Part shown: positions 3,596 to 41,899 of the stretch, in pieces | Layout: every line of letters starts with the position of its first letter | How positions within the stretch are numbered: the first letter of the stretch is position 1 | Assembly (NCBI GenBank): GCA_053919585.1 | Contig: CM132795.1 | Length of the DNA stretch: 64,000 nucleotides | Origin: Euprymna scolopes | Taxonomy: Eukaryota | Direction: 5' to 3' (one strand) | The notes under the pieces: generated by a model | Databases searched by the model: none | Seen by the model: the letters and a program-made list of their open reading frames with translations, nothing else | Told to the model about the DNA's origin: nothing | Program-made: the position numbers and the translations under genes

Positions 3596-3790
3596 TTGGT
3601 GCTAATGAAGAAAGCGATCCGCGCTACTTTTTTAAATCGTATTTCCAAGTTTAAAGTGTTATATGTATTTTTTTTTTATTCAAGTGTAAGGTTAAAGTAC
3701 AGAATAGGTACAAAACACCTTCCCCATGTTAAGAATGGCTTTTTAAATAACGTTATTTCAGCACGGATCACTCTTTGCATGAGTACCATA
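3596..3790 (+). repeat. Dispersed repeat (DNA-transposon-like), copy 1
   Basis: Reverse-complement homologous to 7652-7790 and 6255-6325 (e.g. tacagaataggtacaaaacacc versus ggtgttttgtacctattctgta). Confidence 0.75.
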
Positions 3791-4619
3791 GTCTTTTTTA
3801 GAAATACACTACTAAAAAGTACAGAAATCCGGAACAAAGATGTATTCCAAAAAATCAACGTAAATTACTGTTTTCAACAAATATGTATTTATGACTAAGC
3901 GATACGTCGGAATTTTGGTAAGCTGTGATATTTACCCTGCATGAATGAGACACCCCAAGATTCATTCAGAGTTGAAAATAAGTCTTATAATCGATACTTT
4001 TAGTACTAGAATCTTTAAACATCGAAAATCTTTATTTTATTAAAGAAACACGATCAATTGACGTTATTTATGGAATAACATTCGTTTCCTGACGTATGTA
4101 ATGATATTTGGGTATTTGTCAAACAAGTGTAATTAAGTCCCGATTTCTCTTGATTTAATATTTAATGAATGTTAATCAAACACTACCGTGTTTAAATATA
4201 TGGTTAAGTGGCAGTTTTGTTCATTGAAAACTGCTTTAAAGCTTTACCGCTCTCATTTTTCGACCATATTTCAAACAACTATAACAGATCATAAATAACC
4301 TCCTCAGCTATATAGTGAAAAAAAAACATTCAGTAAAGCACGTTATCAATTTTTTGGTGTTCAAAATCGTAAAATGATGTGAAGTGCGCGACGTTGTTTG
4401 ACTGGTTTCCATAGCAATTACGTCGCTTCGGTGACTACGGTAGCTGCTAATTCACTGCTGTATCGGAAAGAGAAGTAATAATGAAACCGAATGAAAGCAT
4501 GAAAAGGAGATAAGTAGGGATTTTGTTGAAAGCAGACGAGTGCCGTACATTGTGTTTATGGGGCAAAATAAATAAGACAAATTAAACAAAGAACACGCTG
4601 AAGCCTGAGAAAATCATGG

Positions 4620-4936
4620 ATTACAATAGAAATGAAAAGAAATATGGTCAAGCTTAAACATGGAAAAGTAAAGGAGTAGTTAAGACTGGAAATTAAAAAG
4701 GATAAGATAGTCTTGTAAAAATATTTTTTTAAATCCTATCTTGAAATATTGCAGCTGTAAGATTTTAATTCAATTTACAACATAATCAATTCTTAATGCC
4801 ACACTATTTTAAGTTATCAAATATTTTTTACTAGAATAGCTTGTCCTTTTCTTATCCAGTTTTAACTAGTTCTTTTACTTTTCCATATTGAAGCTTAACC
4901 AAATCACTTATAATGCTCGCATTTTTCTATTGTAAT
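4620..4936. repeat. Fold-back inverted repeat, ~110-bp diverged arms
   Basis: attacaatagaaa...aagcttaaacatggaaaagtaaag...gtaaaaatattt (4620-4728) versus aatatttttact...cttttacttttccatattgaagctt...tttctattgtaat (4820-4936). Confidence 0.7.
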
Positions 4937-36455: not shown

Positions 36456-36859
36456 TCTAGAGTATAAATCTCACCTGCCTGTGGAAAGTTTTAGGCAGAC
36501 ATAAAAAAAAACCTACATCCATGCATGTAAAAAAGATGACCGATTTTCAAGAAATCGGTATCGTTTGTAAGCTAGACGTCTCGGACAACAAATATCGAAA
36601 AATTGGCCCCAAACCTTAATTCCTTCACTCTCAACTGGGCAGTTTTATACATTGACGGGCCGATATTTTGCGAGCTATTTTTGCTGCAAGTCCTTGTATT
36701 GGTCGGTTGACTTATCCTTATTTCAACGTTATGAACTTCTCGTCGCGTCATAGAGTAGCCGTCGCATCACTGGTTCGAGCCTGCCTGCCTACTACCACGT
36801 TTTGTTTTTGCTCAACACACAACTACAAACACCTGGGCAACGCCGGGAAACCAGACTTG
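36456..36859 (+). mobile_element. Non-autonomous Helitron, H1-related
   Basis: a|TCtagagtataaatctcacc start, hairpin cctgggcaacgccggg and CTTG|t end. Confidence 0.75.
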
Positions 36860-38047
36860 TAATCTATATATTGTGCGTAATAGATTGTTAGATTACGTTT
36901 CGTTTTATAAGTTTTTAGAAGTGTTTGGATGATTTGAATTATTAGGATATTTCTGCCGGTTTCTGAACAGATGTTCGAGCGGGACCCATTGTCTAATAGA
37001 CAAGGATATAGTTCTGTTTTCTGAAGCATCACCAGGTAGAAGTATTAAGCAGTTCTGCAATTTATTGAGTCACTCGCACTAAAGATTGTATTTTTACGTC
37101 GAAAATCGTGTTACAATTTAATAACTAAGTATTTCATCCACTGCGACGCGAGTGTTGTTGAACTCGGCGGAAAGATTTGAGTGTTCAACACGATTAGTTT
37201 ACGTCGGCCGAAACTTTGTATAAATAAAAATCATGAGAAAATTAGTCCGAACTTGCAGTTGGGGGGGGGTCCCGGCTTTACCCAATTGTAAAATACGCTT
37301 AAATATATTAAGGTTTCGTTATATTATTATAGTTGTGATTTCAAAAGTAAAAGTGTTTTCTAAATAAGATAATACGAATTATCAATCCTCATTTGAATCG
37401 AAAATTGATTGCAACTCTATGAAAACAATTTCAATAAGAATTTACTTTAGTATGTAATTTTTCTACGGCGTAGCTTAGAAGCACGTACTTACATAGATCC
37501 TCTTTTTTCCTTTTCCTTTCATCAAAAAACAAATGGTATATCTTCGGGTGCTACACTTAAGTCTGAACTGGATTAATGAATGAGACCATTTTTAGCCTAG
37601 ACAATTATTGTCTTGGTCCAACGTTCCTTCTAGAAATGCTGTCTATTACCCCCCCCCAGGAAATCCTCCTCGTATCTAACTTGTTTAGTGCATCGAGAAA
37701 TTAATATGGATTCTACCCTCTCCCGCTCATGTAGTCTCCTTTTTATTGCACATTTTATTTACCTATTTTATTTGCATTGAACTTTTTAGGCTGTCTGAAA
37801 ATGTCCGCTTTTTAACTTAAGATGCATCAACCATTTATGTGTTTTTATTTACCTTTTCGCTAATGAAATTGAACTGCATGAATAAATATTTCAAGAACTT
37901 GGCGCATCAGGACTTTCCCCAAAACTACTAGATTTATATTAAGGTGATTTTATTGCTTGATCGTCAATTTGTATAGTGTAATGCGTTATAGGCATTTTGC
38001 TTAGCGTTTAAAGTATTCTTCGTAGCTCCCAGAAAGAAATGTATCTA

Positions 38048-38560
38048 TTTTTGGTCGCGTGCAAGCGACTCTGTAAGTCACTCCGTCTGTCTGTCTATAA
38101 CACTTTTGTGTTTGGCCTTTTTGGTTAAGATCAAAGGTCTGTTAATAGATGCTGTTCTTAGCTTTTCAAGCTTTTCCTGCCCTTTTGGCTAAAATCAAAG
38201 TGTAGTATCTGTTTTTACTACATGAGTTACTTACGTTTGTAACTTTGTGATATAAAGTGGGGGATCACTTTTCTCTATTAAGTTAATGTAAAATGATCAC
38301 CCACTTTACAACCAGTCAGTCTCAAAGCCATTCAAGTCATTCTCCAGATCATTCAAGTTGTTTTTGAAGGAGTCCAGTTATTTTTCAGCATTCAATTCAT
38401 CCTTAAGTTCATTAAAGTCATTCTAAGTTATTAACTCAAGTAATTTCAGCCCATTTTTTCGGTCATTTTAGTTTATCTTTAAGAATTTTATGTCAATCTT
38501 ACATTCACGCATTCATTCATTACAGGAGAGCACGCGACTAATGGCTATCGGCATTGTTTT
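38048..38560 (+). mobile_element. Helentron/DINE-1-like element carrying U2 snRNA fragments
   Basis: subTIRs gtcgcgtgc (38054-38062) and gcacgcgac (38530-38538), gtctgtctgtct microsatellite, internal cattcaagt-type repeats, 3' stem-loop aatggctatcggcatt, T-rich flanks. Confidence 0.75.
38114..38217 (+). pseudogene. U2: Two tandem 5' fragments of U2 snRNA
   Basis: ccttttggctaaaatcaaagtgtagtatctgttttta (38181-38217) and ggcctttttggttaagatcaaag (38114-38136) match the U2 5' region GGCCUUUUGGCUAAGAUCAA(A)GUGUAGUAUCUGUUCUUA. Confidence 0.85.
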
Positions 38561-38824
38561 CAAGAAAAATTGGTAGTTTTGTTCACTTCTAGAAACCATT
38601 GTTATCCAGTATGTTATAACTTTAGTGTATATGGGAAAGTTTACCCAGGGGGTCACTGCGATTGAGGTTGATCGCTCGTGTACTGCTGCTCCAAGGTCCG
38701 AACCCTTTATCATTTTGAATGTTCTATAATTTAAGTCTTGCATACATATATGCATAATTTATACAGGAAGGTTGCGTTAGATCTTCACAGGATTTGTGGA
38801 AATGATCCGGAATGATAAATATAT

Positions 38825-38990
38825 TAAACCACTCTTTATCTGTGCCTAAACCTAAACGTAGATTCCATGAACAGTTTCTTTCTTAGAACTGCAAGCCTGT
38901 AGAATTCAGTTTTCCTGCTTTCTGGCTGACTACAATATGGTTGCCTTAAAGTCTAACGTAAACAAGTTCTTGATGAGCCGTTCCATATGA
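38825..38990 (+). mobile_element. CR1/L2-type LINE 3' fragment
   Basis: gtgcctaaa...gattccatgaaca...ttcttagaactgca; same family as 44790-44950 and 48367-48660. Confidence 0.65.
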
Positions 38991-39533
38991 GTTAACAAAT
39001 TTACCGAATTGATAACTATATTGTCAAATTTCTACTGTACACTCTTAAACCTTATCCTCGAGTGGCCTCTTGGCCTTGATACTATCCCTGTGTAGAAAAA
39101 AAAATCGGCGAATATGTTGCTAAAGCATGTTTTTTTTTTCTGGACAGCGCTAAGAATTAGTTTGTTTTTATTGTTTCTGCACAGAAATCTCAACACATAG
39201 AAAATAAGTTTAACATGTCTATGAAAATAGGGTGCGTTGTAGTTTAAATATAAAATCGCTAGGAGATAAAATATAAAGTTCTGATACATTCTCAGAAAGT
39301 AATGTGCTACATAGTTCAATACAAATAGTGAAATCAAATGGTGGCAATTTTTAATTTACTTCAGTCCAGCACCCTTTTGCATACAATGTTCTGTTTTGAC
39401 CTGTTTCTTTCGAATGTTCCTTTTTATTACGAAACTTTTCAAATATTTCTATGGTTCAAAACTGCACGTCGAAATGACTGCGAGTTTATCTCTCGCACAG
39501 TTACAACAATGACTATATATTAGTGCTGAAATG

Positions 39534-39970: not shown

Positions 39971-41899
39971 AACTAGTTCAAATGCTTTTTTTTTTTTTTT
40001 TTTTCGTTTAGTAAGTCTAGAAGTGTAAGCCATGTTTAGTTTCAGAACAGTTTCCGATGGTTGGTCTACACAAGTCCTGATAGGTGACTGGCTTGCAGTA
40101 GACAGTTGCACACGGCAAAAGATTCTTACCGTGTCGAGACGGAAAAAAAAGATGCGAAATTGCTACAGAAAAGGTGTAATATTTATGGAGCAATTCTGGT
40201 TTCTGATTGGTTGGTAGCAGAGCGTGAATTCGATTCGTCAGTTCCTAGCAGCATCGTTTATAAACAGAATCGCTCGACTGCGTGGTATCATACGCCATAC
40301 TCCAAAATATTGTAACAGTAAGAAGCCTGCTCGTGATTCTGTTCTCTATAACGTTATATCTATAATATGAGAAATCACATTTCTTCGATAATTAAAGTGA
40401 CAGGACAGTGTAAAATTGACTGAAGACAAAAGAATGCTTCATCAACTTTGTCGCCAATATATTATCTGGAAATGGATATTGTGATTTATCCACTCCCAGA
40501 AAAGAAAATTATGAACTGCAGAAACAGATTACATTGTTCCCGATTACGTATGAAATACACATTTCTATAAATCTGTTGAAGCCGTACTTATTTTGACTTC
40601 CGCGGAAGTGGGCACGTATCTGAGCATTACTATTTGGTCAAGTTTTGGCTTGCAGTATTAGTTTGCATATTCTACAGTGCCATCTGAGGAGATAGCGACT
40701 ATGGCAATGTGTCCTACAAATATTTTGACTAATATGGGTTGGAGGTGATGCAAATTGGAAATAATTAAATAACTTCTTCAGAAAATCAACAGGTGTCTGC
40801 TCATTTCAAGTCTATCTTGAGTTTAACTTGGAGACGTTTCATTCAGAATTTTCAGGTATTGTGCTCACGTATAGCAAAATTAGAATACACAGGAAAAAAA
40901 AACGAAAACTCGAGGTTGAAAATTCGATTCTGTATCGGCGATATTAAAAAAATTCAGATGAGTTTTATTTGAAGACCAATTTCTATATTGGGTGAGCACG
41001 TGTTCTATGTTAACAAAAAGCTCAATTACCTTTTCTTTCTAGATTACGCGGATGCTCGGTAGAATTCATTAAGAATCTGCTTACGTATATTCAAACACGC
41101 AAGGCAACCTTTGTGTAAAATAGAAACTGTTCGATTAATCGTCAACAACAACAGGTTTAGAATAGCATAACTTTCTCCATTGAATTAATACAAACCTTTC
41201 TTAAACGTTTTCATTTCAGCCAATATAAACTCCGAACGTTTTCAAGTATATTCTGTGGAACTCGCGATTCCTTCTCTTAATTAGAACACTAGTATGAATT
41301 AGCTAAATTATCAATTCTCATCTCGAAAATTTATGAATAAACTAAATTCCTTTTCTAGGAAACAAACAAAACTAATTGTGGTGAAGCCTATGAATAAATG
41401 CGGTTTGAACAAGGGTTTGTGGTATCTTGCTTTTTCGAGATATCCTATTACTGAAATCGCACGAATCTCAAAAAACTTAATAATTCTGTAAACTTTAGTA
41501 TTTGATAAATGCACTTTTAGAAAATGTCTTGAAAATAGGTTACGTGTAAACCTATATTTTCTGAACATAAAAAAATGAAGATGAAAGCTCGGGATTCGTA
41601 TGCGTAACCACAATTTAATATGACCTTCTAAAACCTTATCTTGCAGTTTATTTCTAAGGTGTAATATAAGTAAATCTAGTATAGCAGGTAATTTCATTCG
41701 CACCACTTTTTCCAAACATTTTACTCGTTGTGTTCCCCAACCCCTCAGATTACGTAGTTTTTTCCCCACGTATAAAAAAAAATCATGATTTTATATTTTT
41801 AACCACACGCTCCCTTGATTATAAATGATTGTCGCATCACATATTCCAGTGTCTAGCTTGGGACTTATGTTGCTGAATTTTGTGGCCAGAGAGGACCAT

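What the first reader, a model, noticed from the sequence alone, without database searches (positions are those of the whole stretch)
38048..38560. Helentron/DINE-1-type element carrying duplicated U2 snRNA 5' ends, including the branch-point recognition sequence
Seen: two tandem U2 5' fragments sit just after the GTCT microsatellite, inside an element bounded by subTIRs and a 3' stem-loop. The second fragment retains stem I, the U6-pairing region and GUAGUA (38202-38207), but there is no Sm site or 3' half. Inference: a rolling-circle element captured U2 sequence and may be amplifying it. Such copies could be landing pads for U2-targeting retrotransposons (Utopia, Keno), or antisense to U2 or branch-point-like in the opposite orientation (TACTACAC on the minus strand).
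Basis: partly seen in the sequence, partly recalled or inferred. Interest (0 to 1): 0.7.

Follow-up and report, generated by a model that had tools for sequence, protein, structure and literature searches.

The report
Rolling-circle-type transposon carrying U2 RNA pieces
This 511-base stretch is one unoccupied copy of a DNA transposon family with about 6,000-7,000 copies in a mollusc genome; every copy carries two pieces of the front end of the U2 splicing-RNA gene, and in many other copies short retroelements have landed at those pieces.

Summary
Window 38048-38558 (up to 38560) is one copy of a high-copy non-coding repeat. It has 12-nt subterminal inverted repeats, a 5' T-string, a (GTCT)n microsatellite, 21-bp central repeats and no target-site duplication, and it sits in T-runs. 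This is the published architecture of non-autonomous Helentrons (HINE/DINE-1, oyster Cg_HINE).

It carries two head-to-tail U2 5' pieces. Piece A (38114-38164) matches U2 nt 11-56 and is degenerate. Piece B (38170-38217) matches U2 nt 4-49 at 42/46 and includes GUAGUA. B shares the host U2's lineage-specific extra A. Both pieces are family-wide, not a one-off: 5,876 copies keep the junction from B into the 3' part, against 6,797 copies of the 3' terminus.

The landing-pad idea is supported in other copies. In 359 copies a retroposon tail abuts U2 nt 38/39 of B, the published Keno/Utopia site. About 80% of the least-diverged copies hold 1-10 U2-headed SINEU-like retroposons directly upstream of B. 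That retroposon family has about 33,000 copies. The window copy is empty.

Not shown: the autonomous Helentron partner, the LINE partner, how the U2 pieces were acquired, and any antisense or branch-point role. The 3' stem-loop is weak.

This scan had already met the family on other pieces of this genome.

The parts
38048..38558 (+). One copy (511 bp) of the non-autonomous Helentron-type (HINE) family. It is the 'short', retroposon-free form. Ts at 38559-38560 may be element or target.
   Evidence: Bounds come from 29 aligned copies. The copy is 94.3% identical to the family majority. An independent DNA-run contig bridges the left flank into the element (record 2).
38048..38052 (+). 5' T-string (TTTTT)
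   Evidence: Present in 27 of 29 copies. Published HINEs carry 2-5 boundary Ts.
38051..38062 (+). 5' subterminal inverted repeat (TTGGTCGCGTGC; family majority TTAGTCGCGTGC)
   Evidence: the repeat finder pair I7, 12 nt, 92% complementary. Conserved across copies.
38054..38069 (+). 5' short palindrome: GTCGC / GCGAC, the inverted repeat complementary to the subTIR
   Evidence: Fold result. The same feature is described for DINE-1 and Cg_HINE.
38085..38096 (+). (GTCT)3 microsatellite. Other copies have (GTCG/GTCT/GTCC) in 3-10 units.
   Evidence: GTCY/GTCK microsatellites are typical of HINE left flanks.
38114..38164 (+). U2-like piece A: a degenerate copy of U2 nt 11-56 with three small insertions
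   Evidence: Local alignment to the host U2 scores 49 against a shuffle mean of 20.6, z 7.7, 0 of 500 shuffles. Conserved in all copies.
38170..38217 (+). U2-like piece B: U2 nt 4-49, covering stem-loop I, the U6-pairing stretch and the branch-point recognition GUAGUA at 38202-38207
   Evidence: 42/46 identical to the host U2. Rfam U2 39.1 bits here and 46-57 bits in other copies. Shares the host-specific extra A in GAUCAAAGUGUAG.
38207..38208 (+). Position equivalent to U2 nt 38/39, the canonical insertion point of U2-homing non-LTR elements. It is unoccupied in this copy.
   Evidence: 359 other copies have a retroposon tail joined here. The published 3' flank of Utopia/Keno starts at U2 nt 39.
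38169..38170 (+). Boundary between the spacer and the 5' edge of B. In other copies this is the site of retroposon stacks. It is unoccupied here.
   Evidence: L025 has a 40-nt 5'-truncated unit exactly here. L030-L039 and L072 have 1-7 units here.
38253..38308 (+). Internal hairpin with 19-nt arms, family-conserved, role unknown
   Evidence: pair I1. Fold -13.4 kcal/mol, z -4.2, 0 of 200 shuffles.
38314..38434 (+). Central 21-bp tandem repeats (two short arrays, 38314-38358 and 38389-38434)
   Evidence: TRF and direct-repeat family D1. Copy number varies among family members.
38530..38541 (+). 3' subterminal inverted repeat (GCACGCGACTAA)
38542..38558 (+). 3' tail after the subTIR (TGGCTATCGGCATTGTT), with at most a 3-4-bp palindrome
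   Evidence: Conserved end in 29 copies. The fold is not better than shuffles.

Best explanation
Window 38048-38558 is a moderately old, immobile, non-coding copy of a non-autonomous Helentron-type transposon (HINE). The family has about 6,000-7,000 copies in this 5.9-Gb mollusc genome.

Inferred from the family architecture: copies were made in trans by a Helentron Rep/helicase-endonuclease that recognises the subterminal inverted repeats and the 3' end. A single strand was peeled off and pasted into runs of T, leaving no target-site duplication.

Shown: every copy carries two head-to-tail fragments of the host lineage's U2 snRNA 5' end as passengers. A is about nt 11-56 and degenerate. B is nt 4-49. 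Neither has an Sm site or a 3' half, so no functional U2 can be made. The transposon has multiplied this U2 fragment to several times the number of real U2 genes, which number about 1,200 in a 764-bp tandem array.

Shown in other copies: the fragment holds the nt 38/39 site used by U2-homing non-LTR retrotransposons. Short U2-headed, SINEU-like retroposons (about 33,000 copies genome-wide) are found joined to that site in at least 359 copies. They are also piled, with varied 5' truncations, directly against the 5' edge of B in most low-divergence copies. Some of these piles were then spread further by the transposon itself.

The copy in this window is the empty form. How the U2 pieces first entered the element is not resolved. 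The two candidates are DNA capture, and inheritance from a U2-headed retroposon with a template-switch 5' extension.
For: Family and bounds.
- 3,687-4,815 first-look candidates; 40 scored copies at 81-90% identity to the window copy.
- Counts with at most 3 mismatches and zero hits to the reversed control: 3' terminus 6,797, junction from B into the 3' part 5,876, junction from the spacer into the U2 head 4,628.

HINE hallmarks.
- subTIRs, 5' palindrome, GTCY microsatellite and T-string ends, 21-bp central repeats.
- No TSD in 29 copies.
- Three paralogous empty sites, all T-runs.
- No ORF of 150 aa or more in the element.
- These are the criteria of PMC4067079 and PMC7492417.

U2 origin.
- The host U2 scores 161 bits against Rfam and sits in a 764-bp array with 1,187 pattern hits.
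- B is 42/46 identical to it. A has z 7.7.
- The extra A after GAUCAA is shared by the host U2 and the element.

Retroposons.
- The head-to-body junction has 32,769 hits.
- Solo copies have ordinary TSDs at non-U2 sites: L071 and L074.
- 9 of 10 sampled copies lie outside HINEs.
- Inside HINEs, L025 has a 40-nt truncated unit at the spacer|B boundary. L072 has 7 units with 5 different truncation points. Six loci on six chromosomes share the same two-unit architecture.
- Spacing between the spacer-to-head junction and the B junction among perfect-match copies: 3-4 of 21 are short, the rest are 266-3,976 bp.
- Tail joined to ATCTGTTCTTAC-TACATG: 359 hits. All 100 listed are the HINE type. The published Utopia/Keno 3' flank starts at U2 nt 39.

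Other.
- The family is very abundant in DNA runs of three coded organisms.
Against: - No autonomous Helentron with the same termini was found. The only Rep family I could examine is a canonical Helitron: Rep plus PIF1 helicase with no endonuclease domain, a 5' TC end inside (TA)n, and no similarity to the element.
- The 3' palindrome expected of HINEs is weak.
- The exact cleavage positions are ambiguous because both element ends and the targets are T-rich.
- The 359 nt-38/39 junctions could descend from one insertion that the transposon then amplified, rather than from many independent landings. I had no sequences of those copies.
- Most stacks abut the 5' edge of B, not nt 38/39. The enzyme and rule behind that second site are unknown, and unequal recombination may contribute to array length.
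- My loci were chosen by similarity to the window copy or by perfect pattern matches, so the proportions are biased.
Confidence: 0.8

Rival explanations
1. The U2 pieces were never captured from the U2 gene as DNA. On this reading they are what remains of a U2-headed (SINEU-like) retroposon that landed in the progenitor element. The A-before-B tandem is then a 5' extension added by template switching onto a U2 snRNA, as described for crocodilian SINEU-2.
For: - U2-headed retroposons are about five times more numerous than the element and demonstrably insert into it.
- A (ending near U2 nt 56) is followed directly by B (starting at nt 1-4). That arrangement cannot come from the 764-bp genomic array. 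It is the arrangement Kojima reports for repeated 5' addition of snRNA sequence (PMC4494074).
- The family majority of B shares CTTGGCC and GGCCAAG with the retroposon heads found inside the element, where the host U2 has CTCGGCC and GGCTAAG.
Against: - The element's sequence after B shows no similarity to any of three retroposon body types (z below 1).
- No retroposon tail lies downstream of B in the element.
- B runs to CTGTTCTTA (U2 nt 49), which is three U2 bases further than the main retroposon head, CTGTTC|CGGCAG.
- CTCGG to CTTGG is a CpG decay that can arise in parallel.
Confidence: 0.3
2. The element is not a Helentron derivative. It belongs to some other, possibly undescribed, class of non-autonomous DNA element that merely shares the subTIR, microsatellite and T-rich-target layout.
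For: - No autonomous partner was found.
- The 3' palindrome is weak.
- Classification rests on structure only.
Against: - Five structural hallmarks match the published definition, including the very specific GTCY microsatellite next to a subTIR plus its complementary repeat.
- The oyster Cg_HINE families were classified on the same basis, also without a matched partner.
- No TSD and T-run empty sites.
Confidence: 0.1
3. The U2 segments are kept because they do something. In antisense transcripts (TACTACAC and about 45 nt complementary to the U2 5' end) they might sponge or misdirect U2 snRNP. In sense transcripts they might mimic the U2 5' end.
For: - The branch-point recognition sequence and the U6-pairing stretch are intact in most copies.
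- About 6,000 element copies plus about 33,000 retroposon copies could give many intronic transcripts.
Against: - Column conservation of A (0.97) and B (0.95) is the same as the rest of the element (0.93-0.96), so there is no sign of extra constraint.
- The window copy has already lost stem I pairing (GCCC in place of GGCC).
- No expression evidence: the runs available were contigs only.
- Orientation bias in introns could not be tested.
Confidence: 0.04
4. The resemblance to U2 is chance, or this is a single retroposed U2 pseudogene fragment at this locus.
For: The Rfam score of the window copy is below the gathering threshold.
Against: - 42/46 identity to the host U2, with 0.00 hits expected by chance.
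- Other copies reach 46-57 bits.
- The segment is present in thousands of copies.
Confidence: 0.01

Closest known systems
HINE / DINE-1, the non-autonomous Helentrons (Thomas et al. 2014, PMC4067079; Yang & Barbash 2008, PMC2374699)
   Same: 12-13-nt subterminal inverted repeats, a short complementary repeat next to the 5' subTIR, a GTCY microsatellite, central repeats, boundary T-strings, insertion into T-rich sites without target-site change, non-coding, thousands of copies, and the ability to carry gene fragments.
   Different: No sequence similarity to those families was tested or expected. The 3' palindrome is weak here. No matched autonomous Helentron was found. The passenger is a U2 snRNA 5' fragment, which those papers do not describe; no paper in the held library contains both 'Helentron' and 'U2 snRNA'.
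Cg_HINE elements of the Pacific oyster, which carry satellite-like central repeats (Vojvoda Zeljko et al. 2020, PMC7492417)
   Same: A mollusc host. The same left-flank grammar (subTIR, complementary repeat, GTCY/GTCK microsatellite) and the same right-flank grammar. A central array of 140-240-bp units always in one orientation. No partner could be matched there either.
   Different: Here the central units are recognisable retroposons: U2-derived head, structured body, AAATAAATAC tail, and varied 5' truncations. They also exist as about 33,000 dispersed copies with their own TSDs. The oyster arrays are described as satellite-like repeats of unknown origin.
SINEU with Mariner-N4_AMi and Tx1-Mar in crocodilians (Kojima 2015, PMC4494074)
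   Same: Short retroposons whose heads derive from U2 snRNA. Repeated 5' addition of snRNA sequence. Marked preference for inserting into one family of non-autonomous DNA transposon. Dimeric forms.
   Different: A different phylum; in the held library I found SINEU described only from crocodilians. The carrier is a Helentron-type element, not a Mariner. Here the carrier itself contains a U2 fragment, which offers an explanation for the preference. I did not identify the LINE partner.
Utopia and Keno, the U2 snRNA gene-targeting non-LTR retrotransposons (Kojima & Jurka 2015, PMC4640811)
   Same: The 3' junction of retroposons in 359 element copies, and in dispersed retroposon arrays, is at U2 nt 38/39 (…|ATCTGTTC…). 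This is the same site as the published 3' flank, which starts at nt 39. Tandem insertions at the site occur, as they do for Utopia-1_NVit.
   Different: I saw only non-coding short elements, no RT-encoding LINE. Among the 100 listed junctions none lies in a real U2 gene. A second, more frequent insertion point at the 5' edge of the U2 fragment is not described for Utopia or Keno.

Membership tests
HINE (non-autonomous Helentron) | 11-15-nt subterminal inverted repeats, a few nt from the 5' end and tens of nt from the 3' end | tested here: met
   38051-38062 and 38530-38541, 12 nt with 11/12 complementary. They lie 3 nt from the 5' end and 17 nt from the 3' end and are conserved in 29 copies.
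HINE (non-autonomous Helentron) | Short inverted repeat complementary to the 5' subTIR, followed by a GTCY-type microsatellite in the left flank | tested here: met
   GTCGC/GCGAC at 38054-38069. (GTCT)3 at 38085-38096, variable (GTCK)n in other copies. Criteria.
HINE (non-autonomous Helentron) | No target-site duplication; insertion into oligo-T / TT; boundary T-strings | tested here: met
   No TSD in 29 copies. 5' TTTTT in 27 of 29. First 3' flank base is T in 18 of 29. Three paralogous empty sites are T-runs. The exact cut is ambiguous.
HINE (non-autonomous Helentron) | Palindrome (stem-loop) between the 3' subTIR and the 3' end | tested here: inconclusive
   Only a 3-4-bp stem is possible. 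Fold z -0.5 for the window copy and +0.3 for L005.
HINE (non-autonomous Helentron) | Central tandem repeats; no coding capacity | tested here: met
   21-bp repeats. Retroposon arrays in other copies. No ORF of 150 aa or more.
HINE (non-autonomous Helentron) | An autonomous Helentron (Rep-helicase-endonuclease) sharing the termini | tested here: inconclusive
   The abundant Rep family examined is a canonical Helitron with no endonuclease domain and unrelated ends.
U2 spliceosomal RNA gene (Rfam RF00004) | Full-length match at or above the gathering score, with an Sm site and 3' stem-loops III/IV | tested here: not met
   39.1 bits against a threshold of 46; only nt 4-49 align convincingly. The real host genes score 161 bits. 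This is a fragment, not a gene.
SINEU-like retroposon (U2-headed SINE) | An snRNA-derived head at the 5' end of a short unit that ends in a LINE-type tail and is flanked by TSDs | tested here: not met
   The window element has no tail and no TSD, and its body is unlike the retroposon bodies. The feature is met by the separate 33,000-copy family seen in L071-L080, which is not present in this window.
Target of U2-homing non-LTR retrotransposons (Keno/Utopia type) | Insertions whose 3' flank starts at U2 nt 39 | tested here: met
   359 genomic junctions of tail|ATCTGTTCTTAC-TACATG in element copies. Published site. The site is unoccupied in the window copy. I did not observe the LINE itself.

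The most novel reading that the evidence does not exclude
The element works as a genome-wide decoy or safe harbour for U2-homing retroelements. By spreading the U2 target to thousands of harmless sites it draws insertions away from the real U2 array: 359 tail junctions lie in element copies and none in real U2 genes among the 100 listed. On this reading the 'central satellite' arrays typical of mollusc HINEs arise in general by serial site-specific retroposition into a target carried by the element.
Probability: 0.12. Interest if true: 0.8.

Novelty: new variant of a known kind. Interest (0 to 1): 0.5.

Why it matters
Three known things meet in one element. Helentron-type transposons ferry host fragments and tandem arrays. 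Retroposons can have snRNA-derived heads; in the held library these are described only from crocodilians. And there are retroelements that home into one site of the U2 gene.

If the reading holds, a DNA transposon has copied the homing site of a site-specific retroelement to about 6,000 places. That shows how a gene-specific parasite can escape the limit set by its target's copy number. It also offers a concrete origin for the satellite-like cores of mollusc HINEs.

For genome annotation it explains thousands of spurious U2 hits. The copy in this window is itself an ordinary, empty, decaying member with no sign of function.

Tried and rejected
1. Chance resemblance or a one-off retroposed U2 fragment. 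Rejected.

2. U2 similarity continuing past nt 49. The Rfam alignment runs on to the stem IIb region, but a shuffle test gives z 1.4. Rejected.

3. The element's post-B body being a retroposon body. z is below 1 against three body types. Rejected.

4. The abundant Helitron_like_N family as the partner (6,421 candidates, 1,603-aa ORFs). Rejected: 5' TC ends inside (TA)n, Rep plus PIF1 only, and no shared sequence with the element.

5. A strong 3'-terminal stem-loop. Not supported.

6. The retroposons being strictly U2-site-specific. L071 and L074 have ordinary TSDs at non-U2 sites, and 9 of 10 sampled copies are outside the element.

7. The 354-codon ORF next to a retroposon array in L076 as a LINE. 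It has no Pfam hit and no RT, so it is no evidence for a LINE.

8. Rfam U2 search over the whole genome. It failed twice; a typed U2 pattern was used instead.

9. Fetching the roughly 8-kb gaps in the U2 array, more Rep loci, and an unbiased sample of element copies.

10. Reads. Only contigs were available, so nothing can be said on transcription, strand or polymorphism.

Full report
**What is at the coordinates**

Comparison with the window's own genome (G000, 5.9 Gb, 925 contigs) shows that it is one copy of a high-copy repeat. There were 3,687-4,815 first-look candidates, and the 40 scored copies are 81-90% identical to the window copy. Aligning 26-29 copies with their flanks fixes the element at window 38048-38558. 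The two Ts at 38559-38560 may be element or target. The window copy is 94.3% identical to the family majority; the sampled copies have a mean K2P of about 0.05. A contig from an independent DNA run of the same coded organism bridges the left flank into the element.

**Anatomy**

From 5' to 3':
- a T5 string (38048-38052);
- a 12-nt subterminal inverted repeat (38051-38062) whose partner lies at 38530-38541;
- a 5-bp palindrome GTCGC/GCGAC complementary to that repeat;
- a (GTCT)3 microsatellite (38085-38096), which is (GTCG/GTCT/GTCC) in 3-10 units in other copies;
- U2-like piece A (38114-38164);
- a short spacer;
- U2-like piece B (38170-38217);
- a strong internal hairpin (38253-38308; z -4.2);
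- two short arrays of 21-bp repeats;
- the 3' inverted repeat;
- a 17-nt tail ending in CTTGTT.

None of 29 copies has a target-site duplication. 27 of 29 start with the T-string, and the first base after the element is T in 18 of 29. Three copies sit in older repeats for which an uninterrupted paralogue was among my loci. All three empty sites are runs of T. There is no ORF in the element.

**The U2 pieces**

The real U2 genes of this genome form a 764-bp tandem array on contig C9 (1,187 hits to a U2 nt 33-68 pattern). They score 161 bits against Rfam U2. The host U2 has an extra A (GAUCAAAGUGUAG) relative to the Rfam consensus, and the element's piece B has the same extra A. The piece therefore derives from this lineage's U2.

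B aligns to host U2 nt 4-49 with 42/46 identities and a 2-nt insertion. GTAGTA is at 38202-38207. Rfam gives 39.1 bits (E 3e-6) for the window copy and 46-57 bits for better-preserved copies. A 22-nt U2 probe hits the 64-kb window once against 0.00 hits expected.

A is a degenerate copy of nt 11-56 with three small insertions (z 7.7; 0 of 500 shuffles). The Infernal alignment runs on past nt 49, but a shuffle test of that region gives z 1.4, so I do not accept it. There is no Sm site and no 3' half.

**Is the U2 segment a one-off?**

No. All aligned copies have A and B. Genome-wide, with at most 3 mismatches and zero hits to the reversed control:
- the junction from B into the 3' part occurs 5,876 times;
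- the 3' terminus occurs 6,797 times;
- the junction from the spacer into the U2 head occurs 4,628 times.

A and B are no better conserved than the rest of the element: column identity is 0.97 and 0.95, against 0.93-0.96 elsewhere. That fits a passenger, not a constrained part.

**What kind of element is it?**

The features match the published definition of HINEs, the non-autonomous Helentrons that include DINE-1. That definition lists subTIRs, a complementary repeat beside the 5' subTIR, a GTCY microsatellite, central repeats, boundary T-strings, T-rich targets and no target-site change (PMC4067079). They also match the mollusc Cg_HINE families, which have the same left- and right-flank grammar (PMC7492417).

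Two defining features are not secured: the 3' palindrome, and a matched autonomous partner. The genome is full of Helitron_like_N copies (6,421 candidates, ORFs up to 1,603 aa, copies 99% alike). That family begins with TC inside (TA)n, encodes Rep plus PIF1 helicase without an endonuclease, and shares nothing with the element. It is a canonical Helitron and not the partner. The oyster study likewise could not match partners. I file the element as a HINE on structure, with about 0.85 confidence in that assignment.

**Longer copies and the landing-pad idea**

Eleven of the 40 best genomic matches share only the part from B onward. Upstream of B they carry one or more units of about 235 nt. Each unit has a U2-like head (nt 4-44), three hairpins, and a tail ending ...GGAGCAAATAAATAC.

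The head-to-body junction of this unit occurs 32,769 times in the genome. Of ten copies sampled along contig C1, nine lie outside any HINE. Two are solo insertions with ordinary target-site duplications at non-U2 sites: L071 with TTCTCGGCTTTC and L074 with CTTGCCTTTTT. The unit is therefore an abundant retroposon in its own right. It is built like the SINEU elements (U1/U2-headed SINEs) that the held library describes only from crocodilians (PMC4494074). At least three body types share the head.

In dispersed arrays the next unit regularly starts at ATCTGTTC directly after the previous tail, which is U2 nt 38/39.

Inside HINEs I see two insertion points.

The first is the 5' edge of B.
- L025 has a 40-nt, heavily 5'-truncated unit exactly between the spacer and B.
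- L072 has seven units with five different truncation points. Simple tandem duplication cannot produce that.
- Six loci on six chromosomes share the same 'full unit plus unit truncated at CAACCCCACAT' architecture. Stacks, once formed, were therefore carried along when the element transposed.
- Among copies with perfect matches to two of my three patterns on contigs C1 and C2, only 3-4 of 21 have the short spacing of the window copy. The others have spacings of 266-3,976 bp, roughly one to more than ten units.

The second is U2 nt 38/39 within B. The string 'tail + ATCTGTTCTTAC + TACATG...' occurs 359 times (at most 2 mismatches, control 0). The pattern was written to accept either the element's continuation or the real U2's. 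All 100 listed matches are of the element type and none lies in the U2 array. The published 3' flank of Utopia and Keno insertions starts at U2 nt 39 (PMC4640811).

I did not see an RT-encoding LINE. I cannot tell how many of the 359 are independent events.

**How the U2 pieces got in**

Helentrons are known to transduce gene fragments, so direct DNA capture is possible.

The rival is that A and B come from a U2-headed retroposon. A ending near nt 56 and followed at once by B starting at nt 1-4 cannot come from the 764-bp array. It looks like the template-switch 5' extensions described for SINEU-2.

Against the rival: the element's body after B resembles none of the retroposon bodies (z below 1). 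There is no tail downstream of B. B extends three U2 bases further than the retroposon head. I leave this open, at about 0.3 for the retroposon route.

**Function**

I found no evidence for the antisense, branch-point-mimic or U2-decoy RNA ideas, and the lack of extra conservation speaks against them. The available runs were contigs only, so transcription and strand could not be read. Orientation bias in introns needs a gene annotation that I do not have.

**Known or new**

No paper in the held library contains both 'Helentron' and 'U2 snRNA'. Searches for cephalopod TEs with U2, or Helitron capture of snRNA, gave nothing relevant. The parts are all known kinds: HINEs, gene-fragment carriage, snRNA-headed SINEs with a preference for one DNA transposon, and U2-homing elements. 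What is new is the combination, in which the carrier transposon itself bears the homing site, and the mollusc host.

This scan had already reported the family from other pieces of this genome. My counts and anatomy agree with those notes. One note's statement that the small retroelements insert only into U2 sequence is contradicted by the solo copies with ordinary TSDs.

**Verdict**

The copy in this window is an ordinary, empty, decaying member of an interesting family.

Noticed in passing
G000 contig C9, about 168.865-168.970 Mb (loci L045-L053): The real U2 snRNA genes form a tandem array with a 764-bp period (1,187 pattern hits genome-wide). At least four places in the listed part show spacings of about 7.8-8.3 kb instead of 764 bp. 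These could be LINE insertions in U2 genes.
   Followed up: partly
L066:6756-10000, L067, L068, L069 (G000 contigs C46, C25, C1, C34): A very young canonical Helitron family. Copies are 99% identical, ORFs reach 1,603 aa (Rep plus PIF1 helicase), there are 6,421 first-look candidates, and the 5' TC ends are inserted in (TA)n microsatellites. It looks recently or currently active.
   Followed up: partly
window 38778-39179: An extremely abundant repeat just right of the element, with the highest summed contig depth of the stretch in all four runs. Many copies elsewhere end in poly(A) (loose ends at 39081). It is probably a poly(A)-tailed SINE. Further repeats lie at 36500-36900, 37170-37437 and 39984-40385.
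   Followed up: no
L071-L080 (G000 contig C1): The U2-headed retroposons come in at least three body types that share the head and mostly the tail. One type has an internal (CTATGACTAG)n microsatellite. They form head-to-tail arrays in which each unit starts at U2 nt 38 (ATCTGTTC).
   Followed up: partly
L042 (C2), L043 and L044 (C4, an inverted pair about 27 kb apart), L041 (C17): Dispersed U2 variants outside the main array with a different stem IIb and 3' half. L041 scores 91.6 bits against Rfam. They may be variant U2 genes or pseudogenes.
   Followed up: no
L076:1971-3032: An open frame of 354 codons beside a retroposon array. It is arginine/glutamate-rich and then cysteine-rich, has no Pfam hit, and runs off the end of the locus.
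   Followed up: partly
window 38215 joined back to 38183 in contigs of runs X1 and X7: Some family copies in two organisms carry an extra partial duplication of the U2 head. It goes back 33 nt, which matches the 93-nt spacing class seen in the genome.
   Followed up: no
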